From: Pocillopora damicornis
Lineage: Eukaryota
NCBI RefSeq assembly: GCF_003704095.1
Contig: NW_020846526.1
Coordinates: 1 to 64,000 of the forward strand
DNA length: 64,000 bases
Reading direction: 5' to 3'
Both the position numbers and the translations under genes were made by a program. Positions within the stretch are counted from its first letter, which is position 1; each line of letters opens with the position of its first letter. This document shows, piece by piece, positions 15,043 through 63,705 of the stretch. The notes under the pieces were generated by a model. It was not told where the DNA came from. It saw nothing but the letters and a program-made list of their open reading frames with translations, and searched no databases.

Positions 15043-15142
15043 NNNNNNNNNNNNNNNNNNNNNNNNNNNNNNNNNNNNNNNNNNNNNNNNNNNNNNNNNN
15101 NNNNNNNNNNNNNNNNNNNNNNNNNNNNNNNNNNNNNNNNNN

Positions 15143-16411: not shown

Positions 16412-16599
16412 NNNNNNNNNNNNNNNNNNNNNNNNNNNNNNNNNNNNNNNNNNNNNNNNNNNNNNNNNNNNNNNNNNNNNNNNNNNNNNNNNNNNNNNNN
16501 NNNNNNNNNNNATCCGAGGGCAAAAGATAGATACTGATATTTTGTGTAGATCTATATAATTTATGGTAACACCCACGTGCATTATATGCATTTCTCTAG

Positions 16600-30400: not shown

Positions 30401-31579
30401 TTTCCTCCACAAACTTCTTGGAGGATCTTGTCAGGAAAAGCAATTTCACGGGAACTCCGGCAGAAACTATGGACATATATTCAGATATGCATCGCTCCTT
30501 TTGCAACCCATTTGTACCTCATGACTTATCGTCGCAGAAGACAGGGCTCAGTTTTGAACCAATTATCAACGCTGGTTCGTTCTCAGTGATCACAACAAAA
30601 AAAGCAATGTGGGTGTTTGATCCCTTAAATGTATCACGATAATAATTAATGCTCAAGCACACCGTTTCAATNNNNNNNNNNNNNNNNNNNNNNNNNNNNN
30701 NNNNNNNNNNNNNNNNNNNNNNNNNNNNNNNNNNNNNNNNNNNNNNNNNNNNNNNNNNNNNNNNNNNNNNNCTGGCGCGACTACTATGTCAGAATATTGA
30801 TTAAGTTTGTTGGTATAATCATTAGCTGCCAAGTTGCATACATACAAAGCCAAACTCTATTTTTTCAGTTGCCCCAGAGAAATGACCACTAATGTTATGC
30901 AAGTGTCTATCTTAAATTGCTTAAAAATAGAATTCGGAAAATTCAATAAAGGTGAAAGAAATTATGAAAACAACTTCCAATCATCAGTTTTACGTATCTC
31001 ACTTTTTAAGAACAATGGTTTTTGTGAATAATATTGTTTGATTTGCTTTAGATCATCATAGGTGTAAAGTACGTTTTTCTTTAATTTTCTTGAAACACAT
31101 AAATTGTATTTAAAATCACAAGGTTCAACTTTTGCTAAAACGGGCTCAATTGATAAGAGGCGAATTTTTTTTTTTCGGAAACCATCGGATAAGACAATCT
31201 GCTTGTAAAGCAAACATCTTCAATACACCAAAATCGATTTGCGCAAATTGGTTCTTCACAACCCATTGTTATTTCTCTCAGGTGAACAATTACCCTATCG
31301 CATACTGTCATTTTTGCACAAAAAGACTTTTAGAGGCTTGTTGGAGTACATGTAAACAAACCTAACGCTGAAAAAACCTTCTTGTCTTCAACAAACATGA
31401 AAATCCATTCAGAATCGTTTCATTTTCTTTTGGAATCTGCAGTGAATGGCTCGATCTCTTGCGTCACGCAGGTGATACAAACACACTTGCGCCTGGCGTT
31501 TCTCGGTCTTTTGAAAAAATAATTTGTTCTGCGGCTGACTTCAAACATTCATTTTCTTTTTTTCAGTCTGGCTGGCAGA

Positions 31580-46749: not shown

Positions 46750-49700
46750 ATGGCTATGACGACCTGGATTGTTCTGTTTCTTTCGCTGTCAGCTTTGGTG
46801 CAGAAAAGCTTCGAAGGTAACAAATAATGCACAGAAAATTGGCTAATGTGAATGTTTATGGTTGTTTTCAGATAAAATTATAAGGTGGCCTAACTCCAAT
46901 AAACTAGAAAGATCATGTTCATAATGGAAAGTTCAGTTTTTATGCCTCACCGTAAAGTGAAAACCCTCAGAAGGTATCACCGGTAATACTATTGCTCTGA
47001 CTATCTCTGCTAATAAGAAAATTCCGTATTGTGACCGGCGAGCCCATCAGCAAATTCCTCTAATATGTCAGTTCCTGGTTGTAGTACGCTGTAGTACGAG
47101 CAGTGGTAATAGTATTCTGTAATAGATTTCTTTTTTTAAGTTCTTTAGTCACAAAGAAGAGCTTCAAATCTCTCCATTTGATCTTGAATTAAAGCGTGCA
47201 GTCACATGTAGTTTAAAATAGAGAACGTTGTTCATTTTTACTTGTGATAACTCGTCGAAGTGTAACTTCGAAGTGTAACCGCGTTAACGTGGGAATGTTT
47301 TCCCTAGGCAAGATAATCGCACGAACAAGTTTTTTCCAGTTATTCTCAGCTAGAAGATGTAACTGTGTTTTTGGAATGGAAATTACCATCCCGAAATCAG
47401 TAAACCTACCTGTAAAGTCCTATGACAAGACATTCTGGAAGAATATTCATGCATTTTATTCTTTTGAATAGCGAAACCGACAGCGATCTAGAATTAGGTT
47501 GAAACAGTCAAAATAATAACAAGCATGACCAAGCAATGGTACTTATTATGACTAGCATCTTCTTTCAGAACAAAGCATATGCACTAGTGAAACAGATGTA
47601 GTGTTCATAGTGGATTCCTCGTCAAGCATTCATATTAACAATTTCAATAATCAAATAAAGGACTTTGTGAAGAGGTCAGCAGCGGAATTCGGCGTTGCAC
47701 CGGGCAAGAGTCGCGCAGCAGTTATACTATTCAGTGCGAATGCTGAAGCCAAGATAAAATTTGGTGACGCCCCAACCCTGAAAAGCTTTCAGGCAAAAGT
47801 GGATCACTTGAAGCACCAGAATGGTGTTGCTACACGAATCGACAAAGCCCTGAAATTGGCAAAGGATCTATTTATTCCCGAGTCGAAAGAAAGAAAGGGC
47901 GTAAAGAAGGTTGCACTCCTTCTTACTGATGGGAAACAAACAAACGATCCGGGGACAGACCTAGAAGAAGCATCTAAGCCTTTACACGACGCAAAGGTCG
48001 TTACGATAGCCGTTGGTATTGGCAACAGCGTGGAAGAAACTGAACTGAAGAAGATAGCTAAGAGCAAGAACGATGTGGTTATAACTAAGAACTATACAGA
48101 CCTGCAAAATAAACTTCTGAGCATAATCAGCATTGCCTGTGATGAGGGTAAGTCCATCATATATTAACTCTTTAAATTCACAAGTGATCAATCAAGAAAT
48201 TTTCTCATAAAATCAGAACACTGTTTGACAAACATGTAGTAAGAATAAAGACAGTGTTCAAAAGGGGAATGTGAATTCTCAACGGTTATTGCTTGAGGGA
48301 AATTTTATACATATTGAAATGGAATTTATGAGAGTGTCACAAACATAATTTCTATAGTCAGAACACTCCCCAAAAATTTAAACAAATGTTGTGAACTATT
48401 TCGTATTTTCTTGCAATTTCGATAATCCTTTAGCCCGAGGAGGGTGAAATTCGAGACGCCCCAACAACTTACCATTCTGGGCATGCCAAAGCAATTCTTT
48501 GTTAAATGCCCGATCGATCTAAAGTTTGAAACGCGGGAAAGATGATCATCATAATATGCCAAACCCTGACTATTTCATGCATTCGCTTTATATTGAAAGA
48601 TATGTGATAAGGCAGTATCGAATGTTTCTTGTTCTTGGAATCTATTTTTATGCAGTTCAAGAAAAAATTTTTAGATAAACGAACAGAGCTCTATATATAG
48701 ACTACAAAATTATACGGGAAAGTACATATGTTTGTACCACGATTTTTCCTTGGCGTGCCTCTGAAATTCATAATAAATTCTCAATCTTAAAACAACAATC
48801 TATGAAAGAAAAGAGATTAAGGAAAATCCAGAGAGGATGGCAGATCATTGATGCAAAAATGTTGGAGATATTGCATCATTGTTTGACCTCTTCGTAGGTA
48901 ACTGTGCTTGCTTCAGCGGCTCATCATATATTACCGTTGAAAACTACGAGGATGAAAAGGCCCAAGAACAAGACGACATCCACTTTGAATTCAAGAGCTC
49001 CAAGCCGTTTGGAACAATCATGTTCGTTAAGGGTACCTATGACGACCAAATTCACGTGGAATATAATCATAACGACGAGCTGACGTACCTTGTGGACCTC
49101 GGAAAAGGTAAGGAGATTTTGTAACCGAGATGTAATCGACCGAACTTGTATTGTATGAGATTAAATAAACATTAAATATATATTTGCATGCGATCCACTC
49201 TCAGCAAATCGTTCTTAGAGCAACTTAGAAAAAGAAATGAGAAGAAAAAGTACTGATTTTAAAGAGCTTGAAACAAGATGCTTCAACTTTCAATTTTAAA
49301 AACTGGTTGACGTGGTCACTGTGATTTGTTTCCAGGGAAGAGAAAAATAATGGCAAAGGGCGTGAAGCTGGACGACAACAAATGGCACACGTTTCGACTT
49401 GAGCGAGTTGGACGTTCGTTCAACATAACCATCGACAATGCAAGTAAACCACAAGGTATAAGAGATATAGTTCATGTTATGAGGTCTAGTCAACAAGTTT
49501 TAAAAAAATAACATCAAGCGTAAGCCCTTTTGACGCTTAGTTTTCGTTTTTCACTGATGCATAGATTCGAAAGGTCTCCACGAATCACTATTGTTTATCC
49601 TATCATCCAGACAGAAATCAGTTGCTATGATTTATTCAGACTTTTTAAATAAATTTCTTCATTGGAGAAGCGATTAAGAATAAAGAACTGTTTCGAAAAG

Positions 49701-50360
49701 ATCGTGTTAGTCTGTATTTCTACTTTCGATCAGCAAACTGATCAGCGTCCATCGTGTTCGTGCCGTAATGTAATTGTGCATGAATGCATTTGAACATCAA
49801 CAACACGTGTCTCAAGAACTGATCGTTGATCTGATCTGAACTGTCTGATCGTTGTAACTCAGCACTTGGTGCAGATGTTAATTCTGTAATAATACATTTC
49901 ACTTTCAAATTTGATCTATTTGAAATAGTTGTATTTGTAATCTTTCAATTTTTGCATTGTCATGCATTTTATACATGAGTCTTGGGATCAGATAGAGAAG
50001 ATAATGATTGAATATAAATCAAGGGATTTCCACGAAGTAAGAGATTGTATCTTACTCAACCCATTTTAAATAGATCGGTAAGAAACAAACTTCTGCCTCA
50101 TTTGACTCTTTTCAGTATTATTATTACTATTATTTTTTTCAGCTATTGGAGAAGTTCCCGGAGAATACAACCGTCTCGATATACCAAAATCAAAGGGTTA
50201 TTTCCTGGGCGCGCCGAATTTTCCAAATTTTATTGGCTGCATTCGGGATCTCAAGGTTGATGGAGAAGCAATAATTGCAAATGCTGTGGGGGGAGCAAGC
50301 GGCTACTCAGTTACAAACAAGGATGAAATGAAATTATGCACCGAAAGTGACCAAGAGTAA
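46750..50360 (+). CDS. Secreted vWA + laminin G domain protein (397 aa)
   Basis: Exons: 46750-46816 (signal peptide MAMTTWIVLFLSLSALVQKS), 47569-48147 (vWA: DVVFIVDSSSSI, ATRID, LLTDGK, IAVGIG; MIDAS residues present), 48898-49107, 49336-49455 (LDDNKWHTFRLER), 50143-50360 (NFIGCIRDLKVDG...C). All introns phase 1; AATAAA at 50501. Confidence 0.9.
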
Positions 50361-50785
50361 GACTAAGCACTGCCACAAGGCAATTGATTTTAAAGTAAAC
50401 TGAGAATATGTAATTGTAATTGTAAATGTAGCCGAAAGACAAGTGATCCAGCAGGAAATTTGTTGCAATTGTGCATGATTCTTTGCAACGAAAGCAATGT
50501 AATAAAAGCTACTAATCTATGCTATGATTTGATTGTTGTAAATAATTCATTTAACATGATCAAGACTACAGGTATATGCCAAATTGGCTTATGATATTGG
50601 CTCAGCGGTTTTTTTTCTTGAGTCGCGAACAAGGTATCAACGTGGCGGTACTTGGTATGCATGAGTGGCACTCAACTATTTCTAAATCTTAGCAATTTGT
50701 TAGTAGTAACTTACTTGATAACGTGAATTGGCCTCTGTAAAGAGTTTCCAAGCTTTGAAACTATGCACTAAATTACTCTGTTATA

Positions 50786-50822
<37 letters not shown>

Positions 50823-53800
50823 ATTGCCCTCTTTATTTATTTTTAAATCTTGTTATGAAAATTCTTCACTTGCAACCATTTACACGACTTATTTCTTAAA
50901 AGAGAAGCGAGAATTTTCTCACTGGGACAAGGTTAAGAGGCCTCGGAGAGCCTCCCCTCCCCCCTTTCTCCCCTCCCCCTCCCCTCCCTCTGTCCCAAGC
51001 ACGGCCCAGAATATCTCATACTCTTCTATAAGTTCAGCTGTTTTGGTTCCCATATCCTCTTCAATTAACCTTTAATAGTTTTTTTTTCAGTGAATTGCGT
51101 GATGTATGAAAACTGTCCGGATGTTTTATGTTTTCCTTTTGACAATTTTTTTTCTAATCCTAAAGCAGAAGCTACAAATCAGCGCTCTATAAAACTCATG
51201 AAAAATAGAACAAGACTTACATTTTTCTAAAGGGATCGACTGATGTAAAAGATTAAAATTTGCTGTACAGAAGAATGATTGATTTTTTTTCCATAAGTGC
51301 CAAGGGATATTTAAAAAATTGGACAAATAAACTAGTTTAGCAAACAAAGATAAAACATTCAACACATTTCGATTTCCTTGCTGTTCATGTTCAGGATTTT
51401 TTTTTTTTTTTTTCATTATTATCATATTTCTTCTTTTTTGTGCTTTGTTTTGGATCATTCTTTAATTTAATTTCAATTTAATTTTTCACCGGATATTTGT
51501 ATATAGCAGCCAAAGGATAAGCATAGACGTCAAATCTGTGGAACATCTCAGAGAAAAAAACTGATAACTTTTGTTGTTTTGAAACGCTGCAAAAATCACT
51601 TCCACGCTTTATTTATTTTCGTTCCCCACGGATTCCTAACTACCTCCTGCTGAGGAATCAAATTGGAATCCATTACACTGGGCGTGATAGCTAATTAGGT
51701 CAAATGCATTTAGCTCGGTGATTAAAAATGTAAGAAAAACATAAATATTGAAAGAGAAGCGGAACTCAGAGGAGCAGAATTACAAGAGATATGGGAAACT
51801 GAAATTCATCGAGTAGCTATCACAAGAGGCATCCAATAGAATAAAAATTGTTGGTATCTTTCGTTAATTATCAGTTAGATCCCAGTTATTGCTGTTCAGT
51901 AATTTTGATTTTGTAATTCCGTTTACAGAGGATGAATATTTATCAGCTTATATTTCACTGATATTCCAACCCGAAATCAATATTCCTCCATTGACAGCCT
52001 AGGGCTCATGTCACATAAGTTTTGGACGATGATAAATAAAATTTTGTTTTCGGAGAATCCTTTTTTTGTTTATTTTTTTCCTAATCTAAGAAATAGTTCG
52101 GTCCTCAGTTGCTACTGGTGCTTAGTGCAATTTAATTCAAGAACCGAAGGAGAGCTGTTGGACTTCTCTAAGAAAATGATCAGAGATAAACATATGCAGA
52201 ATGTGTGCGACAAAATTACTTCATTTGCAGAATACAGCAAAATAACAGGGAGGAATGGAATGTTCTCCAATTTTTATCTTCTTCCTTCTCTAGATGGCGA
52301 AAGTTTGTACTTTGGCCTCTTGACTCAGATTCTTGTGATTGAAAGAAGAAGGCGTGGATTGTGGGAAGAGGTTGATGACGCTTGCGTGTAAAAGGGGCGA
52401 AGTTCATGATCAATTTTTGTGTCCTTTCGGAGTCACGGGCTACTGATTAAGTTTATTCAGCTTGTAGATCAAGAATACAACTCCCGATCATCATAGTTAT
52501 CCTACATCAAGACGTTGTTAGTGATTGTTAGTGATTATGATCAAGTATTCCGACCGTCTGTTTGATTGCATGGAAGTCCTGTTCAGCATGGCAGTCCTGT
52601 AAAATCAGCTAGTGCGCTTGTTAGCTTGAGTTAATCTTTTCTGGTTTAACAGCATTTTCTCTTCCCTTTAAAGTTCCAGAAAGGTATACTTTTTTGAACA
52701 CCAAGTAATACAGGTTATAATTAGATTTGAGTGTTTCCTGTAAGGAAGAAAAAAAAAACAATCTGAAGACTGGCTGAACCTGACCAAATTTGGAAACAAA
52801 TTGCTTTTCTAAACCTATAAGTACACTTCTATGTCATTCAAAGTCTGTGATAAGCTTCAAAAGATTCAAAACAAAAAGACAAGACCATAAAAATTTGTGA
52901 TTTACATAACAAAACATTTAGTCTGCCGTGAGCCTTGCCCGTTGCTCGAGTTTTGACCCCGCTTTCCGGTAAGTTTCATAACGCCCTCATCACTCCAGAA
53001 AGTTCAATTTGGACTGAAAGTTATATTTGGTGTTAGTTGTTTAAAAGTACCCGAAAAGAGCCGTGAAGAAAGAGTTCATTCAGAGGCTGACACGACAAGA
53101 CAATTTAGCCTTCAGACGTTTGGAGAATCTGTGGTGAAGCCGATAAAAGGTTAGTACGTAGTCTTACTAATGTTTAGTGAAATCGCTATTGTTTTGCCCT
53201 TCATGCCTTCAGTTGAGTAATATTGGTTGTCAGTAATGATCGCGTCTCTAAGTTTCCTGCGTATCCTGTAGTATCCGACTGTGGTAGATCTAGTTAGAGC
53301 ATTGTTCCTCTCTCATATGTCGAGCTGAATAAACAAACTTGTGTCGATAACAGAAATCCTAGATTACTCTAAAGATGTTTCTGGATGCCAAACTAGTTTG
53401 TCGTTGTCTTTCCGCGGGACAAATAAATTTTAAAGGGAAGCATGTCAGCAAGGGCGTTCCTACACCATCCTTCAACCAGTTAGAATTTATTCATAGTGCA
53501 GTTGTTTGGTAGAATGCTTTAAAAATTTTAATCTCCAAGAACTCACTACACTGTAAAGTTGACATTTAGTGTTTAGGAAGTTTTATGGCTGGATTTGTTG
53601 CTTACGAAAACATCACCGGGTTTAATAATTGTAACTTGTTATTCATCGCGTTGTTTTTAACTTAACTGCGTGGCATCTGGTGTAATGATAGTACCAATAA
53701 CAGAAATTTGAATATAAATGACACTAAATGAACCCTGAAGTAAAGATCTATTTACGTCAAGAGAAAATAATGTTTAACTGCATTTGATGCTATTTAATTG

Positions 53801-54743
53801 CGTAACGACTCCATAAATCTCTGTACTGCACTCGTACTGTGCGAGTTTCATTAAGTTTTTCACATTTGTATACGAATCCCCAAGCTGGGTTCGATTTTGT
53901 GTAATACTGTAATCTCGTAATAACTATGCTGTAAAGGTTAGTATTATGGCATTCAAAGAGATCATTTGTTCATATCTTCTCTAAACAATACGCTAAAGTT
54001 GCATTGTTTTGGCCTCAGGGTGAATTTCAAATTATATAACTTTCTCGCATCCCACTGTCACCGTCGTGAAGTACTCAAAGTCAAATCAGTATAAAAATAT
54101 TTTTTGGTGTCATTGACAAGGCAATATTTTGATCAGACAGGGACACGCGAACAGTTTCGGACTTCAATGCTTTTCCTAACAGATCCAAAGTATAGATTTT
54201 TGCGCCAGGACATTTAGTGTACAAAGTTAGGTTTCATTTTAGATTTTAATGCCAAACTTTCATTTCATGGCCTTGCTACTATATTCTTGTTATAAAGTTC
54301 GTACTGAGTTGTCGAGCTTTTACAGAAAAACTGAGGTTATATGGCGTGACAATGATAATTTGTCATCTCTTTCACTGCGTTATTTCCGGCTTACCGTGTG
54401 CCGCTGTCTGACTAGTATGAATTTCCTGTCAGCTCATGAGCATTACGCAATTGTAATCAAACCTGGAGTTTGTTTTGGGTGCATCCGTTCGAAGGAAAGT
54501 TCTGCTAACTAGCGGGACACGTTTCGCCCTTCAGTCTCACTGGTCAGTCATTTAATTCATATTTGTTAATTATTTTAAGTATATAACGACATATCTATGC
54601 TTCTGCTCGAGTCTCATTTTTTCTTTGCTTTTGTTTTTTTGAGAAAACATTCCTGCACGGAAACGAGTGATATTAAAATGAGGTGATCATAATACTGAAA
54701 ACTTTCTATGAAACATCTCCTTATAACGTCAATTTTAGGACTA

Positions 54744-54846
54744 GATAATTTGGCTCTATCAACTGAGTTGATGATGTATCTATAGGCCATCTTGCAGAGT
54801 TTCAGAGTTGACATTTTGAGGGTTAGCCCTTCGTCAGAGCGAAATT
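54744..54846 (-). mobile_element. Penelope-related repeat fragment with hammerhead-like core
   Basis: The minus strand reads TTCGCT-CTGACGA-AGGGCTAACCCTC-AAAA-TGTC-AACT followed by the ATCAACTCAGTTGATA tail. Confidence 0.7.
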
Positions 54847-55638
54847 TTACGACTCGTTTGATATTCAACCTAAAGTCGCAAGACCAAAGCAAAAATGGCT
54901 GAAAATCTGAAGGAAAAACTACATGTCTGTGTTTGTGTTCACTTAGAGCGCCATGGTCAAAAATGAATTCTTTTAGAGTCATAGATGGGAGGAACGTTTT
55001 AACGCTAGAAACAAATGTACTTCCTCTTTACTTTACTTAAAATAGCAATTACAGGGGTGCCAAAAAATTAAACTTATCTGTAGGGAGTGTGTGAGAAATC
55101 CACCTGACTGAAAGTAATATCGGGGGTCATTTCTTTCTATAATGCTGATGTGGTTGTACGTACAACAAACTTGATCGTGTGGGTGAAAGTGCACTTGTAA
55201 CTTGATACCTTGTTCGGCCTTTGTACGAAGATCAAAAACAAATGGAGCTTGGAATATAAATAGAAATTACGACGCCTTTCTGTTTTTATAATTCATTTTG
55301 TGGAACGAGATGATTTTCGCCTATTTCAATTGGTATTCCTCAGTAGCGAAGTCTCAAATAGTTTTTCGTAAGTTTTCATTTAACTTTTTCAGCATCACTT
55401 TCACTAAAAAAAACTTTAGTTAAGTTGAAACCGGCTATCAAAAGATGATCCATGTCCTCCTAAACTATCTTATTTATTTCTATTGCACCCCATGAAAACA
55501 TTACTAGTTCGGTATCCTTTACAGAAATAAGCTTATTTACTCTTCCGCCGAAAGTTCAAACAACGCTATTTTTCTCCGCGCCCGCTGTGTCTGAATGGAA
55601 GAACAGGAAATTCTTGCTTTTTTAGGAGACTTTAAGGA

Positions 55639-55723
55639 GCCAGTCGCATAGTTGACGCTTGTACCATGGGAGAGGATGGGTGGGCCAGTCGCATAGTTGA
55701 CGCTTGTGCCATGAGAGAGGATG
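55639..55723. repeat. Two-copy 45-bp tandem repeat
   Basis: GCCAGTCGCATAGTTGACGCTTGT(A/G)CCATG(G/A)GAGAGGATGG at 55639 and 55684. Confidence 0.9.
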
Positions 55724-57367
55724 GCTCCTATGGTCCACGACTCAATGTTTTTCGAAAATTGATCCGGATTTAATGCGCTTACTGGTGTGCATGGCAGCAA
55801 CAAATTTCATCAGTTTTTGTCTTTTCTGGGTTATCTTATGTATCGTAAAATAGGTGTGCTTTGGGGTTTTTATGTTGTTGACAATTTTGTAATGCAGCCG
55901 CAAGAATTAAATTCCAGCGTTTCGCTTCGGGGGAGGAGAGGGGTGCCAACACCCGAACAACATGGCAGTAATTAAACAATGACATGTTTCAAGACTTGTA
56001 TAGACTATCGCTATTTCACAAAATGTTGATTTACAAAATTTTTACAAAAAATTCCTACCATATTTAGTAATTGGCACTGTCAATTACTTTTTTTTTTTAG
56101 CCAGCTCGGTTTTAGAGTTTCTTTAAGAGCCGAAAAGTAGGTATACGCTTTAATTAATTTCATTAATTAAACAATGAAAGCGAAAAAAAGGTTATGCCAT
56201 ATAATTCCTACAAATGTAATGTAAAACTATTTTACATGTGGTACAGTTAGCAAATCCACGCCAAGATTAAGAGCTTGTTGCCATCACTGCGATTTTGTTA
56301 CAGGCGCTCCTTGATAAAATCCGCTCAGCACGAGAAGAATAGTGAGGTGCAGTTACTGAAAGATTATGAGATAAACTGATCTTTCTTTCACTTTGTGCAT
56401 TCCCTCTTCAGAAATATCAACAACTCGCGTGGTGGTCGTTTGAAGAGTGGTGCTTTCCTGTTCACGTTATAATTGTTTCACCGCAAAATATGTCTTAATT
56501 CTCGACCAATCAGAGCGCGTATATCCTCATAACCACCTTACCTAAGAAATCAATAAACATTAATTTTTCGCATGAAGTAACTCCACAGCGAACTTGTTCT
56601 TTCCAAAGAAGATTCACAGATTTTTGGTTATTTCTTGAGAGAAGCGTTTTTCTTTCTTTCTTCATCTCTTTCATTCTTCCTCTTTTTTTCTTCCTCTTTA
56701 AAACTGGACAACAAAAGGCTATTTCATGCTGGAAAATACTTCGGAAAAGCCATATGCTCGCCGGGCTAGCGGACGAATGATGGATATCATTGCGGCTTTG
56801 GTGATTTTTCTTGATGAAAGTTAGTGAAGGAAGAGTGAGAAGACTATTTTCATTTAGGTCAGGTCGTCTGTGGTTTCTAGGTATTTATGCTTTTAAAATC
56901 ATCTCACTGATATTGTATATCGTCGAAAAATTCTCTTCATTTAATTGGCCATAACTCCAACTCTTCATCTCTATGGTTTTTAATGATTATTGTAAAATCA
57001 TACCACGGAGCAGCAAAATTGCCTCCTGAAATTAACTACAGTGTGTTTGGTTTCAATTAGCGCTCGTTTCATGATCGGCTTCTAGTCTTTGAATGAGATG
57101 TCTTTGTTAAGAAACCATGGGTAAACTTTTTCCATCAGTTTGTTCTAACCTACGATACTGTGCAATCAATCTCGAATAAGGATTACGCTGATTACACGAA
57201 TAAAAATGTCTTTGAAGCCTGAATTCTACTGTTAGTCTGATGCATTCTCATTGAAAGTAGACAAATTTAACAGTGCCACTTAGATTCATTGACAGATGCA
57301 AAACAACTAACAGCGTTTGTCGCGTTCATATTGAAAATAAGGAAAATAGCTTTCTTTGCTTGCTCCT

Positions 57368-57579
57368 TTAATCCTTTAACTCCCAAGATCTCATTAGTAA
57401 TTCTTCTTACTGTCTACCATATAGTTCTTGTGATGTCAGTTTAGAGAATTTGGTATTGGATCAATGAATAATCCCCTAATTCATATTTTTCTTTATTCTC
57501 ATCTCTTGTCTGCTTGATATTGTAATGATGCTGGAAGGAGAAATTCTGTCTTGGTCACACATGGTAATTAAAGGGTTAA
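57368..57579. mobile_element. 212-bp TTAA-flanked MITE (piggyBac-like ends)
   Basis: TTAA-TCCTTTAACT...AATTAAAGGG-TTAA. Related copies at 42432, 60408, 63512 and 24850, and probably 34246-34417 and 48164-48335. Confidence 0.88.
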
Positions 57580-58890
57580 GTTGTTCTGTCCTAGTTTAAG
57601 GTGATTTGTTATATCCTGGCAAAAATCAAACTAATGACAGCCCAACACGAAAGCTTTTAATTTGACGGTCCCCGTGTGAGGTATTTTCACTCATGATCAT
57701 TTCTCTGTGAGAGGCCCGCAGAAAAACATAAATGGTTCATGTCATAATGATCTGTACTTCCTTTGGCCCCTTAACCGATGGTTAAGTAAACAGTTAACAA
57801 TATATTTGAATACGTTCGGTCAGGAGATTTGTGTGATGCCTCAGGGTTGATGAGTAAACAGTCGGTGCCTAACACAAGATCGACACATCACACTTTAATG
57901 CGGTTGGTGGCTGGCAGAGGAAACAATCTGAACATGGATTTCTCTTTAACCTAAAACTCTCATCATCGTTGCTAACATTAGGGAGAAGTACTAGATATTG
58001 AGCTTAGCTCGTGTCAAGTTTTCCTGTGAGATACAAGACTGCAGCAAATTATCAAGTGGTTTCTAAAGAAATGGTTGTACTCAGTCTGGAGGGATCATTT
58101 TGATCGAGCTGGCTGAAGTAACAATTTTCTTTGAAATATTATCTTAATGTGGGGCTCAGAAAATTTAATTAACTTAGTTAAACAGGAAATCATACGGTCA
58201 ATATCCCGGGTGAAAAATTACAACACCGCATCACGTAATACTTACAAAGATTTCTAGTACAGTATCTCTAAATTGCCAAAAAAAAAAAAATACTGTTCGA
58301 TATTGTGAGTGTGCGAAAACAGCTCCGAGAGAAGTGGATTTCAATCGGATGACAGCTTTTACGTCTAAAGGTTAAAATTTTGGCCAATTTTTGGCTAACA
58401 GTCAACATCTTTCCATTGTTGTCACCAGAAATATGTTTTTGTGTGAACTTTTTTAACGCCTAACGGTTAAACTTATGGCTGTTTTACGGCTAGCGGTTAA
58501 CCCCATTGAGACCCTCTTAGAAAATCACCTTAAGACTAAAACAAGTTTGTCTTCTGGTGTCGAGAATAGTTGATGGAAGCAATCTTATTTTTGCAAAGGT
58601 GATCAAATGTTGCTTCAGACTGCATGTTTTTAATTTCACCGTCTTTGAATACCAACCACAACATCAGTCACGGCAATTTAACACCGTCTGCTTTGTAAGC
58701 CAATATTGCCTCTTAAATGAAGTTTTGGCAGATATTGATGTTAACGCCTCTTGTGAATGAAATGAAATTAACCTGGTTGAGTTTAGACCACTTGTGTTTG
58801 GGAGTTTTGAGGAGAGCATAATCGTGGGCGTCCAACACACTCGAAAGTTAAAATACACTGCTTTCATTCTGATTTCAGGCGACAAAAACC

Positions 58891-61800
58891 ATGACGAAGA
58901 GGATATTTCTGTGTCTTTCACTTGTTGCGTTGGTGGACCAAATCATGGGTGAGTAGAAAATTAGTCAGCATAAAAAGCGAACTCGGAAAACTTAACGCCA
59001 CTGGAATAAGCTCAGAAAAGAAGCCTCTAACTTGTACGTACAAAAACCTTTTCTTTGTTCCACTTCAGTTATACGAGCTAATATTTCTCTGGTAGAGCTC
59101 TTCCACGCTATTAATTTTTAATTTCACGCCTTTCTCCAGGGTTTCTTATCAAATTGATCAAGAACTCTGCAATAGGTTTTCCTTATAACTTGTAAGTTCG
59201 TCATTCGTTCANNNNNNNNNNTAAAAAATATCAAATCTGTTTTTCATTTAAGAAATATGTAATTAATGAAAAATTGAATTAAGAAAAGATATTTTAGTCG
59301 AGCGCCATATGTCATTTCCGGAAACACTTAAAATTAACTGTTAATTGCGAAATGTAAACCATAGAGGGATTCTAGAATTTACGAATGGTGGTTAACACTA
59401 GTTATTGACATATTAATGAACTAAACAGTCGAACTGATTTCTTCCCTGATCCAAACTTAGGTATTGTAAATTGCTGACCCCTGATGGTCGGTTATTTTTT
59501 CCTTTCATAGTCACGCAAAGTGTCCGATTTAATTACGGATAAATGTTTTCTATAGTGGATTCCAGTTGTACAATGTCTATAATCTATAGTCTACCATCCA
59601 TATTAATGGACTTGATGGTCAAGTTATGTTGACTTTTGTTTAAAATATTACCCTGTAACGAACAAAGTCTTGCATTCCTTCTCTCGTTGATGATTCTGCT
59701 ATCGTCACGGACTAAATTTTTAGCTTGAAATGTATTTTTGAAGTTCAGAACTGAATGGTACATCGGTGGCGTATTTTTTTAGAAAAGTTCTTAAATGATG
59801 AAACGTTCTTAAATGATGAAACATTCTTAAATGATGAAACGTTCTTAAATGATGAAACGTTCTTAAATGATGTGTTATCAAAACCTATCGAATGCATGAA
59901 AAAGTATCCTTATGAGTTTAAAAGTAGATCACCCGTATCTCTCAGTTAGTAAGCGCACTTAGATTGGTCAATTCAACCTGCCGTATTTCATTGTCCGGCC
60001 CGCTAAATTGAATACATATAATAAATATCTTACTAACCTTGTTTTTCTCGGTCCATACTGTAAGTAACGGAACCTCTAATTCGGTGAGTAAGAACTACTT
60101 ACAACTTGTGATAATTGCTCTTAGGGATCTCTGTATGTCCTTCTCGTGAGATTCAGGCCACTCAAGGGGAAGTCACTTCCCCGAATTTTCCAGATGCCTA
60201 CCCTTCTGATGTAAACTGTGTTCTGACCATTGATGGTGGAAACAGTGTTAAAATCAAGCTGAAGTTTGAACATTTTGAAGTTGAAGAAGACGATAATGGT
60301 AAGTGCATTATAAACTAAACTTTTTCATTTGCATTATTTGTTAAAAGTCTTTTAAATATCAAGTTGTGCTAAATTTCTAATGTTCGCATAACTTTCTAAA
60401 GGTATTATTAACCCTTAAACTCCCAAGATCTGGTTGTGAAATCTCCCCTCTAGCTGCTGTGCATTTCCTTGTAAATTAGTAACAAGAAATTGGTGTTAGA
60501 TCAACAGAGCAATTTCTACATTATAAGTTTAAGCATTCTCTTTACCTGTTGGCTGAATAATGTATGAACACTATAAGGGGAAGTTACATGTTAATCAAAT
60601 CTGGTAGTTAGGGGGCTAATCAAGAACGTATCGCTAATAGCATGGCTCAATTTCTTCGTAGAAATTTCCAATTTAGATGTAATATTCCGCGCAAACATAG
60701 AATTAATACCGTGGCCGACAGCACAGCAAACAATTGGCTTTTGCGTCGCTTTAAGGCGCGCTGCGCACTCCTCTAATAACTTATGTGTGAGCTTCTGAGA
60801 GTAAACATTTTTTACGCGAGCGAAGATTTAAACTGTAAACCGATATAACTTATTTCGTAGATCCAAACGAGTGTAACTATGACGCTGTGACCATCATCGA
60901 TGGCCCAAGAACCTCTCGATACTGTGGCAGAAGAACTCCCCCGGAGTATACATCGACAGGAAATAAGATTTCCATCGGCTTTAAGTCGGACGAATCTTTT
61001 GAGATTAAAGGTTTCAACATCTCGTTCACCTCCTTCGCTGTTGAGACAGATCGTAAGTAAAATTGATTTGTGAGGGTAACTGGTCACTTCAACGACAACC
61101 AACTCGCGAACACCTTTGGTCGACTCGCCCACGCCTTTAATCAACTCGCCCTCAGTTGGCAAGTTGAGTACCCGGCCACTTCGAGTTGACCAAAGGTGTC
61201 GGCGAGTCGACCAATGGTGTCGCCGAGTTGGTTATCGGCGGGTTGACATGTCGGCGAGGTGACAAATGCTCAAAATGAACATCTGCCAAACGCTTCATTT
61301 CCTTAACATTCAAGATTAAATGTTTTTAACTGAGAAGCTCGGGCATGAGGGAACACTCTCTTGTGGGTATGGAGAAGCTGATATTGTAGTGTATGGTATA
61401 ATATAGTGTGGTACGGTTCAGTACGATATGGCTTCGTTTTGGTGCGATACAGGTATCTTTCGATATGATATGGTACGATTTGGTACGATAAGGGTATGTT
61501 TCGGTACGATATGGTACGGTTCGGTACGATATGGATATGTTTCGGTCCCATATGGTACGATTCGGTACGATGTGGATATGTTTCGGTACATTATGGTAGG
61601 GTTCGGTACGATACGGGTATGTTTTGGTCCGATAAGGTACGATTCGGTACGATATGGGTATGTATCGGTACGATACGGTACGGTTCTGAATGACACGGGT
61701 ATGTTTCGGTACGATGTGGTACGGTTCGGTACGATACGGATACAGTTCGGTACGATACGGGTATATTTCGGTGCGATGTGGTGTAGTAGGTTATGGTTCG

Positions 61801-62667
61801 GCTCGTTTCGGCGCAATACGCCCAGGTATGGAATAATAAGACGCGCTCAGCGAACTATGTGTTATGGCATGCTACGATATCAAACAAAAACAAAAAAAGC
61901 CAACCAGGATCACCTTCAATACTCAATTGAATACTACTCTATTCCGAAGTTTCTGATTTGGATAATGTTTTTCCTTCATTGTATTTTTCAGCACCAAAAG
62001 GCTCTGACATTTGTCCCACAAGAGAAATTAAGATCAAGCCTGACTCGCCAGAAACAATGAAAGGAGCGCTTTATTCACCAAATTTTCCCAACTTTTATCC
62101 AAACGACCAGAGCTGCACATTAACTTTGGACGTACCTGATAACTACAAGGCTGTTGTCACGTTCCAGAAGTTTGCTTTGCAATGTAAGAACAATTCCTGC
62201 TTTGTTATCAGTATGTTAAAAACTTTGCAACGAGTATTTTTCCTGAAAAAAACTTAGCAAGTTTCTCATATATATGTTATCGTTTTGCTCCGTAGATTCT
62301 GAGACGTGCGATTTTGACAAGTTAGTGGTTAGTGACGAGAGCGACAGTGATACACAGTGCGGGGGGGGCGCAGACCGGCTCCCTCCTTTAATAGAGAAAA
62401 AAGGAAGAGAAGTCAAGTTTTCTTTCACCACTGATAGTTCAACAACATCAACAGGATTCCAGTTGGAGTATAACATCACTCGTCTTGAAGAAGGTGAAAT
62501 ACCGGTATTTAAACGTGTATTACTGGAAAGGTTCGTCTGCGATCTAAGCTGCGTAGCAAGGGCTTGCATGGCAAAGCACACCAGTAGCACACTCGTGGGC
62601 CGGCTTCTGCGCGCGTGACTTGACACTTTTCATTGTCTGCGGTCAAGTACATTTTCTTTTGCCTGGG

Positions 62668-62702
<35 letters not shown>

Positions 62703-63500
62703 ATAACGAGGATTTTGTTTGTGACTAAAAGAATTTACCTGATCCCCTATTGAACTCTGAAGTATTCTAACGATCTCCCCTCATTGGGGAGTTGGGTTGT
62801 TCATGATCAGTTGCGCATGGTGGTTATGCGCAAATACCAATATCAAAAATCTATGTAGGTGGTATAATTATATTTTATAGCATAGTATTTACCGCCTCAT
62901 GAAAAAAACTTTTAAATAGACGTGAAAAACTACTGTAGATCAAGTTCATTTTATAACAGTACAACTACTGATCTTATTCAAGTGCAACTTTCGCTTTGAA
63001 TACATGTTTTCTATATTCTGCAATATCAACAATTGACTCTATCAGAGAAGCGCAGCCTGTATAGCCAGGCTCCTTAAGGGAGTAAGAAAAGAGAGGCTGG
63101 AGTGTGATAGGGATGAAAAAAGCTCTCATGTATCTACAGTTCCACCTTCATACTCTGACTGACTTCTCTTCCGCCCTCCCCCCCGGAAATCATGTGATCT
63201 CAAAGAAAATCCCCCGACCCCCCCCCCCCCCCCCCCCCCCCCCCCTGCGATAAATAATGACAGATTCCTAAATTTTTGTTGGCTGAACAGGTCGGTGTGT
63301 GTGTACCACAGGATTGGGTTATACAACCATTGCAAACTTCAAACCAAGAAATGACAGAAAGCACGATGATATCCGCTTTGAGTTTAAAAGTACTCAATCG
63401 AGTGGAATGATCATGTATGCCAAAGGATACTACAAGGATTATATTTACATTGGTTACAAGGATAGCAATGTTTTTATGTACCACATTGAGCTGGGCACAG
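58891..63500 (+). CDS. Secreted CUB-CUB-laminin G protein, 3' end beyond the window
   Basis: Exons: 58891-58948 (signal peptide MTKRIFLCLSLVALVDQIMG), 60125-60298 + 60861-61052 (CUB1: SPNFPDAYP, CNYDAV, YCG, FKSDES..KGF), 61992-62183 + 62296-62493 (CUB2: SPNFPNFYP, CDFDKL, FTTDSS..TGF), 63291-63500 (LamG start). All introns are phase 1 GT-AG. Confidence 0.9.
59787..59872. repeat. 18-bp minisatellite, about 4.8 copies
   Basis: (GTTCTTAAATGATGAAAC)n, intronic. Confidence 0.95.
60408..60619. mobile_element. 212-bp TTAA-flanked MITE
   Basis: TTAA-CCCTTAAACTCCCAAGATCT...GTAGTTAGGGGG-CTAA; same length as, and collinear with, 57368-57579. Confidence 0.8.
61082..61263. mobile_element. CpG-rich palindromic MITE-like element
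   Basis: ACACCTTTGGTCGACTCGCC (61110-61129) against GGCGAGTCGACCAATGGTGT (61201-61220) is 19/20 complementary; the ends are GTCAC.../...GTGAC. Confidence 0.75.
61390..61812. repeat. Pentamer-based satellite (GTACG/ATACG/GTTCG) with a roughly 35-bp higher-order unit
   Basis: Recurrent GGTATGTTTCGGTACGATATGGTACGGTTCGGTACGATAC-like units inside the CUB1-CUB2 intron. Confidence 0.92.
62669..63245. repeat. Opposed homopolymers G33 (62669-62701) and C28 (63218-63245) in one intron
   Basis: Counted directly; both runs are followed on their own strand by a GGATTTT(G/C)TTTG motif. Confidence 0.85.
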
Positions 63501-63511
63501 GTACCTAAGCC

Positions 63512-63705
63512 TTAATCCTTTACACCCTAACATCAGTATGCATAATCTCCATTCTGTTCTCTATACATTCCCTAAGGAGCTGATAAGGAGAATTTGTTTG
63601 ATAATCAAGAGCTTCTTTAGTAGGTGATTAGTTCCGTTACTCTCGTGACCCTAACATGTGTTTCATGGGTGATACTGTAAGGAGATTTTTAGATGCTAGT
63701 CACTT
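63512..63705. mobile_element. TTAA-ended MITE, reverse-complement relative of 24850-25057
   Basis: TTAATCCTTTACACCCTAACATCAGTATGCAT...CTGTTCTCTATA mirrors TATAGAGAACAG...ATGCAAACTGATGCTATGGTGT at 25004-25047. Confidence 0.8.

What the first reader, a model, noticed from the sequence alone, without database searches (positions are those of the whole stretch)
48898..63500. Neighbouring genes share one LamG module but carry different heads (vWA vs CUB-CUB), with opposite charge
Seen: exons 48898-49107 and 63291-63500 are both 210 nt, phase 1-1, and align without gaps at 27/70 identities by hand count (G.C.C..G..Y.T..N...DDI.FEFKS....G.IM..KG.Y.D.I...Y.......Y...LG). They share an unusual CxC at the domain start. 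One follows a MIDAS-intact vWA exon and the other follows two CUB domains. Both genes have a short phase-1 signal-peptide exon with the ATG just after an acceptor. The variable loop is acidic in one (EDEKAQEQ) and basic in the other (KPRNDRKH). Inference: a tandem family of secreted two-headed adaptors diversified by exon shuffling onto a constant LamG, possibly forming charge-complementary or CxC-linked heteromers.
Basis: partly seen in the sequence, partly recalled or inferred. Interest (0 to 1): 0.75.

Follow-up and report, generated by a model that had tools for sequence, protein, structure and literature searches.

The report
Tandem coral LamG genes, swapped heads
Two neighbouring coral genes for secreted proteins share a signal-peptide exon and a three-exon laminin-G tail but carry different front domains, a tidy though unsurprising case of gene duplication followed by exon shuffling.

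Summary
The two 210-nt exons align without gaps at 26 of 69 residues, plus a shared split-codon Gly. In the 234-Mb genome they are each other's only significant match. There are two separate same-strand genes.

- Gene 1 (46750-50360) is SP-vWA-LamG, 397 aa. It has its own stop and an AATAAA signal.
- Gene 2 (about 52916 to contig position 65340) is SP-CUB-CUB-LamG, 449 aa. It has its own 5'UTR exon. All junctions inside the laid stretch are confirmed by RNA contigs.

The N gap lies in a gene 2 intron. RNA contigs of 4 of 4 runs join 58948 to 60125 across it.

The SP exon and all three LamG exons are colinear homologues, and all introns are phase 1. This points to a whole-gene duplication followed by a change of head.

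CUB-CUB-LamG with an invariant CxC is an uncharacterised family found across Anthozoa. The basic loop is the family state, and the acidic loop of gene 1 is derived. The vWA exon belongs to a pool of at least 149 single-exon vWA cassettes.

There are only two members, not a larger family. Heteromers joined by charge or by CxC are untested, and gene 1 has no RNA evidence here. Interest is modest.

The parts
46750..46816 (+). Gene 1, coding part of the signal-peptide exon (ATG 46750, second ATG 46756, ends in phase 1, donor GT)
   Evidence: It is homologous to the gene 2 SP exon: blastn 46756-46838 against 58891-58975, 67% over 85 nt, E 2.7e-4. No RNA evidence.
47569..48147 (+). Gene 1, single vWA exon (579 nt, phase 1-1) with DxSxS, T and D
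   Evidence: Pfam VWA 1.7e-32, 113.5 bits. Motif positions, boundaries. The closest solved relatives are collagen VI alpha-3 and mussel PTMP1.
48898..49107 (+). Gene 1, LamG exon 1 (210 nt, phase 1-1) with CxC and the acidic loop
49336..49455 (+). Gene 1, LamG exon 2 (120 nt, phase 1-1). A second phase-1 donor at 49443 is equally possible.
   Evidence: Pfam Laminin_G_1 27.0 bits (cut-off 24) on the open frame. Boundaries.
50143..50360 (+). Gene 1, LamG exon 3 with the GC...C cysteine pair and stop codon TAA (50358-50360)
   Evidence: It is 55% identical to gene 2 exon 3 (E 1.4e-15).
50501..50506 (+). AATAAA, 143 nt after the gene 1 stop; likely polyadenylation signal
   Evidence: This is a motif only, with no RNA evidence.
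52916..53148 (+). Gene 2, 5'UTR exon. The 3' end at 53148 is shown. The 5' end is estimated from the 234-letter loose end of the run X10 contig.
   Evidence: The loose ends before 58877-58880 end in a 15-mer that occurs exactly once in the window, at 53133-53147 (0.08 expected by chance). The donor is AG|GTTAGT. Only the last 30 letters of the loose end were seen.
58879..58948 (+). Gene 2, signal-peptide exon (ATG 58891, ends in phase 1, donor GTGAGT)
   Evidence: The joint 58948|60125 is present in 4 of 4 RNA runs.
59212..59221 (.). Assembly gap (10 N) inside the intron between the gene 2 SP exon and CUB1a
   Evidence: RNA contigs splice across it. It was not filled.
60125..60298 (+). Gene 2, CUB1 first half (174 nt, phase 1-1)
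   Evidence: Pfam CUB 4.5e-11. The joint 60298|60861 is present in 4 of 4 runs.
60861..61052 (+). Gene 2, CUB1 second half (192 nt, phase 1-1)
   Evidence: Pfam CUB 1.9e-07. The joint 61052|61992 is present in 3 of 4 runs.
61992..62183 (+). Gene 2, CUB2 first half (192 nt, phase 1-1)
   Evidence: Pfam CUB 3.7e-07. The joint 62183|62296 is present in 4 of 4 runs.
62296..62493 (+). Gene 2, CUB2 second half (198 nt, phase 1-1)
   Evidence: Pfam CUB 7.5e-05. The joint 62493|63291 is present in 3 of 4 runs.
63291..63500 (+). Gene 2, LamG exon 1 (210 nt, phase 1-1) with CxC and the basic loop. The gene continues beyond the window on the same contig: LamG exon 2 at 64332-64442 and exon 3 at 65126-65337, followed by TAA.
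   Evidence: The loose end behind 63501 reads into exon 2.

Best explanation
Two separate tandem genes on the same strand of a stony-coral genome encode secreted mosaic extracellular proteins.

Gene 2 (SP-CUB-CUB-CxC-LamG, 449 aa) is this coral's member of an old, uncharacterised family found across Anthozoa. Gene 1 (SP-vWA-CxC-LamG, about 397 aa) arose from a duplicate of that gene. It kept the signal-peptide exon and the three LamG exons. Its four CUB exons were replaced by one vWA exon of the collagen-VI type, taken from the genome's large pool of single-exon, phase 1-1 vWA cassettes. All introns are phase 1, so the swap kept the reading frame.

After the swap the gene 1 LamG evolved fast. 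The basic loop that the family conserves became acidic.

Inferred function: both are matrix or cell-surface adaptors.
- The head binds a protein ligand. For CUB-CUB this would be as in PCPE-1 or cubilin. For the MIDAS vWA it would be as in collagen VI.
- The neurexin-type LamG binds a glycan or receptor partner.
- The invariant CxC is the only cysteine pair not accounted for by the usual disulfides within the domains. It sits in the first LamG strand of the model and probably forms disulfides between chains or outside the domains.
For: Shown:
- Gene 1 ends in a stop (50358-50360) with AATAAA 143 nt later.
- Gene 2 has its own 5'UTR exon ending at 53148, about 2.55 kb after that stop.
- A 1799-letter RNA contig (run X9) carries gene 2 exons CUB1a to LamG exon 1 in order, with loose ends reaching on at both sides. 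None of its listed pieces lies on gene 1.
- Five gene 2 junctions were seen in 3-4 of 4 runs from 4 studies.
- blastn of the two gene regions gives exactly four colinear significant matches: the SP exon and LamG exons 1-3. The heads do not match.
- Every exon length fits phase 1-1.
- LamG exons 1 and 3 match only each other in the genome.
- All four full-length proteins found by the exon-1 profile are CUB-CUB-LamG: Nematostella (two genes), a Paramuricea-type protein and one of unknown taxon. One search adds Actinia and Dendronephthya.
- CxC and a loop Arg are invariant in the family.
- Gene 2 keeps 41 of 45 family-invariant columns. Gene 1 keeps 21 of 30, or 22 after one misaligned column is corrected.
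- In the exon-1 tree gene 1 sits on a branch of length 0.92, against 0.28 for gene 2.
- The vWA exon has 149 matches at E<=1e-5, arranged in arrays. The best non-self match is 46% identical.
- Cysteine counts in the mature parts: gene 1 has 6 (vWA 2, CxC 2, LamG 2). Gene 2 has 12 (CUBs 8, CxC 2, LamG 2).
- The model of a close gene 2 relative has pLDDT 77.9 and places CxC in strand 37-41. It matches neurexin-1alpha LNS2 with a target-normalised TM-score of 0.79.
- Gene 1 exon 1 is open in all 15 cluster sequences read.

Inferred: the direction of the swap, the ligand classes and the role of CxC.
Against: - Gene 1 has no RNA evidence here. The single reads call went to gene 2. Its exon 2 donor is ambiguous (49443 or 49455).
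- No full-length vWA-LamG protein appeared in any search. However, this coral's own full-length gene 2 protein did not appear either, so these blanks say little.
- The tree rests on 69 residues. The support for gene 1's place is weak: 87/88 for the clade of 14 rows, and 87/44 and 91/79 for the inner forks.
- LamG exon 2 alone is not significantly similar in the protein search (E 0.07).
- Only the last 30 letters of the 5' loose ends were seen. An even more distant upstream exon cannot be excluded.
- Gene 1 has lost several family-invariant residues, and the loop Arg is R, Q or G among close relatives. That would also fit relaxed constraint.
- No functional data of any kind were found.
Confidence: 0.72

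Rival explanations
1. Gene 1 is a decaying or silent duplicate (a young pseudogene or a relic that is not translated), not a working vWA-LamG protein gene.
For: There is no RNA evidence for it here. It has a long branch (0.92). It lost 8-9 of 30 family-invariant LamG residues. The family-invariant loop Arg is R, Q or G among close relatives, and a block of 6 residues differs between two allele groups.
Against: All five coding exons are open, with AG/GT sites and matching phases. The MIDAS motif residues, CxC, the LamG cysteine pair and the core residues are kept. Exon 1 is open in 15 of 15 related sequences, and all of them keep the acidic loop. The vWA exon is open in relatives that are 93-94% identical.
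Confidence: 0.13
2. The two genes were assembled independently. A mobile three-exon LamG cassette was inserted behind two unrelated heads, and no whole gene was duplicated.
For: The heads are unrelated. All exons are phase 1-1, so any cassette could move.
Against: The signal-peptide exon is homologous as well, and it is colinear with the LamG exons. Both SP exons have an acceptor 9-12 nt before the ATG. The genes are adjacent, lie on the same strand and are the only two copies in the genome.
Confidence: 0.08
3. One reading: the two products pair with each other, through the acidic and basic LamG loops or through CxC disulfides, to form a two-headed vWA/CUB heteromer.
For: The CxC pair is the one cysteine pair left over in both proteins. 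LamG exon 1 carries net -9 in gene 1 and +3 in gene 2. The genes are neighbours.
Against: CxC and the basic loop are conserved in anemones and octocorals, where the searches found only CUB-CUB-LamG proteins. Their role therefore predates any heteromer and does not need one. Both whole proteins are net acidic.
Confidence: 0.1
4. Both models are parts of one long gene or one read-through transcript.
For: They are on the same strand and all exons are phase 1. Only 30 letters of the 5' loose ends were visible.
Against: There is an in-frame stop at 50358 inside the last LamG exon, followed by AATAAA. The gene 2 transcript contigs carry a 5'UTR exon that lies 2.55 kb past that stop. The longest loose end (234 letters) would end about 30 nt after a TATA-like CATAAAAA. 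Gene 2 has its own ATG and signal peptide.
Confidence: 0.03

Closest known systems
Anthozoan CUB-CUB-LamG proteins with only automatic names. Nematostella: XP_001626198.2 'CUB and sushi domain-containing protein 1', XP_032229661.1, XP_048587667.1 'neuropilin-2'. Actinia tenebrosa: 'dorsal-ventral patterning tolloid-like protein 1'. Dendronephthya gigantea: 'tolloid-like protein 1 X2'. Paramuricea: CAB4023290.1. Exaiptasia: KXJ09195.1 'Neurexin-3' (partial).
   Same: Gene 2 has the same order of parts (SP, two CUB domains, CxC, one LamG, then the stop). Its length of 449 aa falls within the 417-503 aa of these proteins. It keeps 41 of 45 family-invariant columns.
   Different: Gene 1 shares only the SP exon and the CxC-LamG part. 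It carries a vWA domain instead of the CUB pair and an acidic loop instead of a basic one. In my searches nothing is known about the function of any member.
Neurexin LNS domains (best match neurexin-1alpha LNS2) and laminin, agrin, perlecan and pikachurin LG domains
   Same: The fold and sequence family agree. Pfam Laminin_G_2 scores 66.7 bits on a close gene 2 relative. Foldseek against 2h0b gives E 2.3e-13 and a target-normalised TM-score of 0.79. The C-terminal cysteine pair is present.
   Different: Here there is a single LamG at the C-terminus of a small secreted protein, with no EGF repeats and no membrane anchor. The printed alignment to neurexin starts after the N-terminal CxC, so the CxC has no counterpart there.
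Procollagen C-proteinase enhancer 1 (PCPE-1: SP-CUB-CUB-NTR) and cubilin CUB pairs
   Same: It is a small secreted protein with a CUB-CUB head followed by one different C-terminal binding domain. The CUB pair of a family member aligns to PCPE-1 CUB1-CUB2 over residues 78-312 (E 1.5e-17) and to cubilin (E 5.6e-27).
   Different: The tail is LamG, not NTR. Nothing shows that it binds procollagen. The likeness in function is only my inference from the architecture.
Collagen VI alpha-3 N-terminal vWA domains and mussel proximal thread matrix protein 1
   Same: The gene 1 vWA exon is closest to these among solved structures (E 2.4e-53 summed over repeats, and 6.4e-33). It has DxSxS, T and D.
   Different: There is one vWA domain only, with no collagen triple helix, and it is fused to LamG.
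Exon shuffling of phase 1-1 modules in extracellular mosaic proteins (the textbook model, as I recall it from Patthy)
   Same: Every intron is phase 1, domain borders coincide with introns, and there is a large pool of single-exon vWA modules.
   Different: Here the result is seen in a tandem pair that still shares its SP and tail exons. That makes the direction and extent of the swap readable.

Membership tests
Laminin G / LNS domain (Pfam PF02210, PF00054) | Profile match above the curated cut-off | tested here: met
   The gene 1 exon 2 frame scores Laminin_G_1 27.0 bits (cut-off 24) and Laminin_G_2 24.5 bits (cut-off 22.9). Gene 2 exon 1 alone scores only 14.1 bits, below the cut-off. Its close relative P0008 scores 66.7 bits over the full domain. 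The joined models were not searched.
Laminin G / LNS domain (Pfam PF02210, PF00054) | Beta-sandwich fold like solved LG/LNS domains | tested here: met
   The AlphaFold2 model of P0008 has pLDDT 77.9 and pTM 0.75. Foldseek's top hits are neurexin LNS2, beta-neurexin, agrin and perlecan LG domains, with E down to 2.3e-13. This was tested on a relative of gene 2, not on the window's own joined proteins.
von Willebrand factor A domain with MIDAS | VWA profile match, plus DxSxS, a Thr about 70 residues later and an Asp about 30 residues after that | tested here: met
   Pfam VWA 113.5 bits (cut-off 23.8). DSSSS is at residue 15, T at 88 and D at 120. The motif definition is recalled. Metal binding was not tested.
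CUB domain | CUB profile match and four cysteines per domain | tested here: met
   The four half-domain exons score 23.5-43.5 bits (cut-off 21.4). Each half has 2 cysteines, so each domain has 4.
Anthozoan CUB-CUB-CxC-LamG family (unnamed) | SP, two CUB domains, invariant CxC, a basic loop with an invariant Arg, one LamG, about 420-500 aa | tested here: met
   Met for gene 2: 449 aa, 41 of 45 invariant columns, loop Arg present. Gene 1 meets only the CxC-LamG part (21 of 30 columns). It lacks the CUB domains and has Q at the Arg column. It is therefore a derivative, not a member by architecture.
Neuropilin / tolloid / CSMD / neurexin (the automatic names given to relatives) | Neuropilin: FA58C, MAM and a membrane span. 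Tolloid: astacin protease. CSMD: sushi repeats. Neurexin: several LNS domains with EGF and a membrane span. | tested here: not met
   Pfam finds only CUB and Laminin_G families (plus CUB-like variants) in P0020, P0032, P0033 and P0042. In the window's exons it finds only CUB, Laminin_G and VWA above the cut-off.
Exon-shuffled mosaic gene | Symmetric exons of one phase at the module borders | tested here: met
   All internal coding exons have lengths divisible by 3 and enter in phase 1. The gene 2 borders are confirmed by RNA joints. The gene 1 borders are predicted from AG/GT sites only.
Coral skeletal organic matrix proteins | Detected in a skeletal proteome | not tested
   The passages read in PMC4890752 list CUB-only, laminin G/EGF and TSP-VWA proteins. 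They list no CUB-CUB-LamG or vWA-LamG protein. Supplements were closed, and no proteome data were compared.

The most novel reading that the evidence does not exclude
The invariant CxC in the first LamG strand is a dedicated disulfide site between chains, and it makes this anthozoan family covalent dimers. In pocilloporid corals the head-swapped paralogue lets the same tail build mixed dimers. Such dimers would bridge a collagen-VI-type vWA partner and a CUB ligand. The acidic and basic loops would steer heterodimer formation. This would be a lineage-specific matrix cross-linker created by one exon swap.
Probability: 0.08. Interest if true: 0.55.

Novelty: new member of a known kind. Interest (0 to 1): 0.3.

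Why it matters
The pair shows the textbook mechanism for building extracellular mosaic proteins in a form that can still be read. The signal-peptide and tail exons are still recognisably shared, the head is exchanged, and every intron is in phase 1.

It also flags an uncharacterised anthozoan family, CUB-CUB-CxC-LamG. That family currently carries misleading automatic names (neuropilin-2, tolloid-like, neurexin-3). The pair could serve as a small model for how coral matrix proteins diversify.

It does not open a long-standing question, and nothing about it would surprise a specialist in matrix evolution.

Tried and rejected
1. Looking for vWA-LamG architectures elsewhere.
- The two-exon profile against 1.84 billion representatives gave 46 hits. 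I read 33 of these sequences and scanned 10 with Pfam. The full-length hits are all CUB-CUB-LamG.
- Two of the 10 scanned (P0019, P0021) are bacterial Big_9/cadherin-like repeat proteins. I take these for chance or compositional matches.
- Most other hits are short ORFs called on genomic contigs (one exon plus translated intron), so they say nothing about architecture.
- The search for homologous proteins with the LamG region of P0032 returned only Nematostella itself, 2 of 240 candidates.
- With the vWA exon, its length window of 106-336 aa excludes a 397-aa protein, and it returned only single-exon ORFs.
- With the family alignment it returned 6 proteins, none from stony corals.
- So I could not decide whether vWA-LamG exists outside this genus. 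P0012, P0013, P0015 and P0016 (LamG exon 1) and P0089-P0091 (vWA exon, 58-60% identical, on one 876-kb contig) are candidates whose context I could not fetch.

2. Skeletal-matrix idea. The passages read in PMC4890752 and PMC12549020 mention no such protein. Both full-text searches gave no paper on a CUB-CUB-LamG or vWA-LamG protein among the rows listed. Supplementary tables, such as the Nematostella matrisome list, were closed and may hold the family.

3. CxC as a leftover of an EGF domain (the C-x-C-x-x-G pattern, recalled). I considered this and set it aside. A leftover would not stay invariant in 11 of 11 family members.

4. Whole-protein charge complementarity. Rejected: both proteins are net acidic.

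5. Species identity. The assembly size of 234 Mbp matches the published Pocillopora damicornis assembly (passage in PMC9646523). The runs that hold the stretch are coral or marine metagenomes. The scaffold number is recalled. The name is therefore probable, not shown.

Exon peptides were handled one by one, and natural database proteins stood in for the whole.

Full report
**Observation.** Read in phase 1, 48898-49107 and 63291-63500 each give 69 whole codons. The other two frames hold stops. The two peptides align without gaps at 26 of 69 positions. This is far beyond chance. In a six-frame search of the whole genome (234,350,878 bases, 4393 contigs) the gene 1 exon found itself, the gene 2 exon (E 9.0e-12) and two matches at E 1.5 and 4.9. 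The reciprocal search found only the pair.

**The assembly gap.** The 10 N at 59212-59221 lie between a short exon that ends at 58948 and the first CUB exon, which starts at 60125. RNA contigs from 4 of 4 runs (4 studies) join 58948 to 60125 with GT..AG ends. The joint keeps the frame, and the split codon reads Gly. Both sides of the gap therefore belong to one transcript in the given order, and no coding sequence needs to be hidden in it. No listed contig runs through the gap, so its real length and the genomic continuity stay unknown. I did not fill it.

**Gene 2.** The joints define these exons:
- 58879-58948
- 60125-60298
- 60861-61052
- 61992-62183
- 62296-62493
- 63291-63500

Three joints appear in 4 of 4 runs. 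The other two (61052|61992 and 62493|63291) appear in 3 of 4. The loose end behind 63501 reads straight into the next LamG exon. On the same contig beyond the window (L005) that exon lies at 64332-64442. The last exon is 65126-65337, followed by TAA. The coding exons sum to 1347 nt, which is 449 aa.

The ATG at 58891 opens a hydrophobic leader that ends in phase 1 at a GTGAGT donor. Before 58877-58880 the contigs carry 143-234 further letters. The last 15 of these occur exactly once in the window, at 53133-53147 (0.08 matches expected by chance), and are followed there by a GT donor. Gene 2 thus has its own 5'UTR exon. If the 234-letter loose end is colinear with the genome, it starts near 52916. 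That is about 30 nt after a TATA-like CATAAAAA and about 2.55 kb after the gene 1 stop. I saw only 30 letters of those loose ends, so the start is an estimate.

**Gene 1.** The model rests on open frames, AG/GT sites and homology:
- ATG 46750 to 46816 (phase 1)
- vWA exon 47569-48147
- LamG exons 48898-49107, 49336-49455 and 50143-50357
- stop at 50358-50360, and AATAAA at 50501

A second phase-1 donor at 49443 is equally possible. The coding length is 1191 nt, 397 aa. The vWA exon scores Pfam VWA 1.7e-32. It carries DSSSS at residue 15, Thr at 88 and Asp at 120, which is the MIDAS pattern as I recall it.

**One gene or two.** The stop inside the last LamG exon, the AATAAA, the separate 5'UTR exon and the second signal peptide make two genes. 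The 1799-letter contig of run X9 carries gene 2 exons CUB1a to LamG exon 1 in order, reaches on at both ends as loose ends, and none of its listed pieces lies on gene 1.

**How the two are related.** blastn of 44000-50700 against 52700-66000 gives four significant matches, and they are colinear:
- the signal-peptide exon (46756-46838 against 58891-58975, 67% over 85 nt, E 2.7e-4)
- LamG exon 1 (E 2.6e-7)
- LamG exon 2 (E 1e-4)
- LamG exon 3 (E 9e-17)

The heads do not match. At the protein level exon 3 is 55% identical (E 1.4e-15), and again each finds only the other in the genome. Exon 2 alone is weak (34%, E 0.07, against 0.28 for the next match). All internal coding exons have lengths divisible by three and enter in phase 1.

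The simplest reading is a tandem duplication of a whole SP-head-LamG gene followed by exchange of the head exons. A LamG cassette landing twice is less likely.

**Which head is older.** The profile of the two exons, searched against 1.84 billion representative proteins, gave 46 hits at E<=0.001. Most are short ORFs from genomic contigs. The four full-length hits (417, 441, 449 and 503 aa) all have two CUB domains and one LamG. They belong to Nematostella (two genes on one 17.4-Mb record), a Paramuricea-type octocoral and an unnamed source. A partial Exaiptasia protein fits as well. A search with the family alignment added Actinia tenebrosa and Dendronephthya gigantea.

Their source names (neuropilin-2, tolloid-like protein 1, CUB and sushi domain-containing protein 1, Neurexin-3) are automatic, and the domain content does not bear them out.

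The loop is basic throughout the family. Gene 2 keeps 41 of 45 invariant columns. Gene 1 keeps 21 of 30 as printed, or 22 after correcting one column where a fragment was misplaced. CUB-CUB-LamG is therefore the old state, and vWA-LamG with an acidic loop is the derived one.

In a tree of 29 exon-1 sequences, gene 1 and its near-identical relative sit on a long branch (0.92, against 0.28 for gene 2). Four partial rows were dropped from that tree, and long multidomain and very short hits were never included. The gene 1 branch lies inside a clade of gene-2-like coral fragments, apart from the anemone and octocoral sequences. Support is modest, and 69 residues cannot carry much.

**Source of the vWA exon.** The genome holds at least 149 matches at E<=1e-5 (150 of 384 candidates were scored). 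Most are open frames of about 200 aa packed in arrays on contigs C4052, C1502, C255, C3313, C241 and C3843. The best non-self match is 46% identical. Closer relatives (58-60%) exist in another assembly, two of them, plus a 49% relative, on one 876-kb contig. Their ORFs also resemble gene 1 in the residues translated from the exon borders. This vWA lineage is therefore older than the genus.

**Is gene 1 alive.** Exon 1 is open in all 15 cluster sequences I read. All keep the CxC and the acidic loop. They fall into two allele groups that differ at 6 residues, and the family-invariant Arg column is R, Q or G among them. The vWA exon is open in relatives that are 93-94% identical. This fits a working but fast-changing gene better than a pseudogene. 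Without RNA and without dN/dS it is not settled.

**What the parts resemble.** A model of P0008, a natural 217-aa fragment close to gene 2, has pLDDT 77.9 and pTM 0.75. It places the CxC in the first strand (residues 37-41). Foldseek puts it next to neurexin-1alpha LNS2 (E 2.3e-13, target-normalised TM-score 0.79), then beta-neurexins, agrin, perlecan LG3, pikachurin and SHBG. The sequence search agrees. The vWA exon is nearest to collagen VI alpha-3 and mussel PTMP1. The CUB pair of a family member is nearest to cubilin, PCPE-1, neuropilins and MASP/C1s.

**Cysteines and charge.**
- Cysteines: the mature part of gene 1 has 6 (vWA 2, CxC 2, LamG 2). Gene 2 has 12 (CUBs 8, CxC 2, LamG 2). If the domains form their usual internal disulfides (recalled), the CxC pair is the one left over.
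- LamG exon 1 charge: net -9 in gene 1 and +3 in gene 2.
- Whole LamG charge: -7 and +3.
- Head charge: +3 for vWA and -16 for CUB-CUB.
- Whole mature parts: both net acidic, about -4 and -13, counting whole codons only.

**Mechanism, with its status.**
- Shown: there are two genes, they share SP and tail exons, the heads are exchanged, all introns are phase 1, and the family spans Anthozoa.
- Inferred: both are secreted matrix or surface adaptors. The head picks a protein partner, the LNS-type tail picks a glycan or receptor, and the CxC forms disulfides outside the domain, most simply between chains. The change of head and loop gave gene 1 new partners.

The heteromer idea is possible, but it is not needed to explain a CxC and a basic loop that are conserved in animals where only CUB-CUB-LamG proteins were found.

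**Literature.** Two full-text searches, together with passages from PMC4890752 and PMC12549020, turned up no description of these architectures. Supplements were closed and may list family members. The assembly size matches the 234-Mbp Pocillopora damicornis assembly cited in PMC9646523 (passage). I take the species as probable only.

**Limits.** Exons were searched one at a time, and database proteins stood in for the whole proteins.

**Verdict.** This is an ordinary but clean product of tandem duplication and phase-1 exon shuffling, set in an uncharacterised anthozoan family. Interest 0.3.

Noticed in passing
window 63505-63640: An abundant dispersed repeat lies directly behind the donor of gene 2 LamG exon 1. 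The first look found 2547 candidates in the genome. All 40 that were scored are 87-91% identical. It explains the very high depth in bin 63401-63600 and the mixed loose ends at 63509-63514 in the RNA contigs.
   Followed up: partly
window 59782-59872: An 18-nt tandem repeat with 5.1 copies lies in the gene 2 intron. Contigs of runs X1 and X4 lack 54 nt (three units) here, which is a length polymorphism.
   Followed up: partly
window 61410-61757: A 41-nt minisatellite with 8.5 copies lies in the intron between CUB1 and CUB2. It creates long false ORFs on both strands. Just downstream, at 61747-61782, contigs of three runs carry a 36-nt duplication.
   Followed up: partly
window 62665-62701 and 63218-63245: There is a G run of 37 and a C run of 28 in the intron before LamG exon 1. 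Read laying skipped these places as repeats.
   Followed up: no
G000 contigs C4052:294-396 kb and C1502:362-395 kb (also C255, C3313, C241, C3843): These are dense arrays of single-exon vWA cassettes, with dozens per contig on one strand. They probably belong to giant multi-vWA genes of the collagen-VI or matrilin type.
   Followed up: no
If so, this stretch of the contig carries several genes for secreted mosaic proteins. I did not examine it.
   Followed up: no
window 3653-3752, 15043-15142, 16412-16511, 30672-30771, 42020-42119: Five further assembly gaps of 100 N each lie in the window, outside the finding.
   Followed up: no
L005 (contig 64001-74000), about 73080-73999: Open frames downstream of gene 2 look like exons of an unrelated helical-repeat protein. 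They were not analysed.
   Followed up: no
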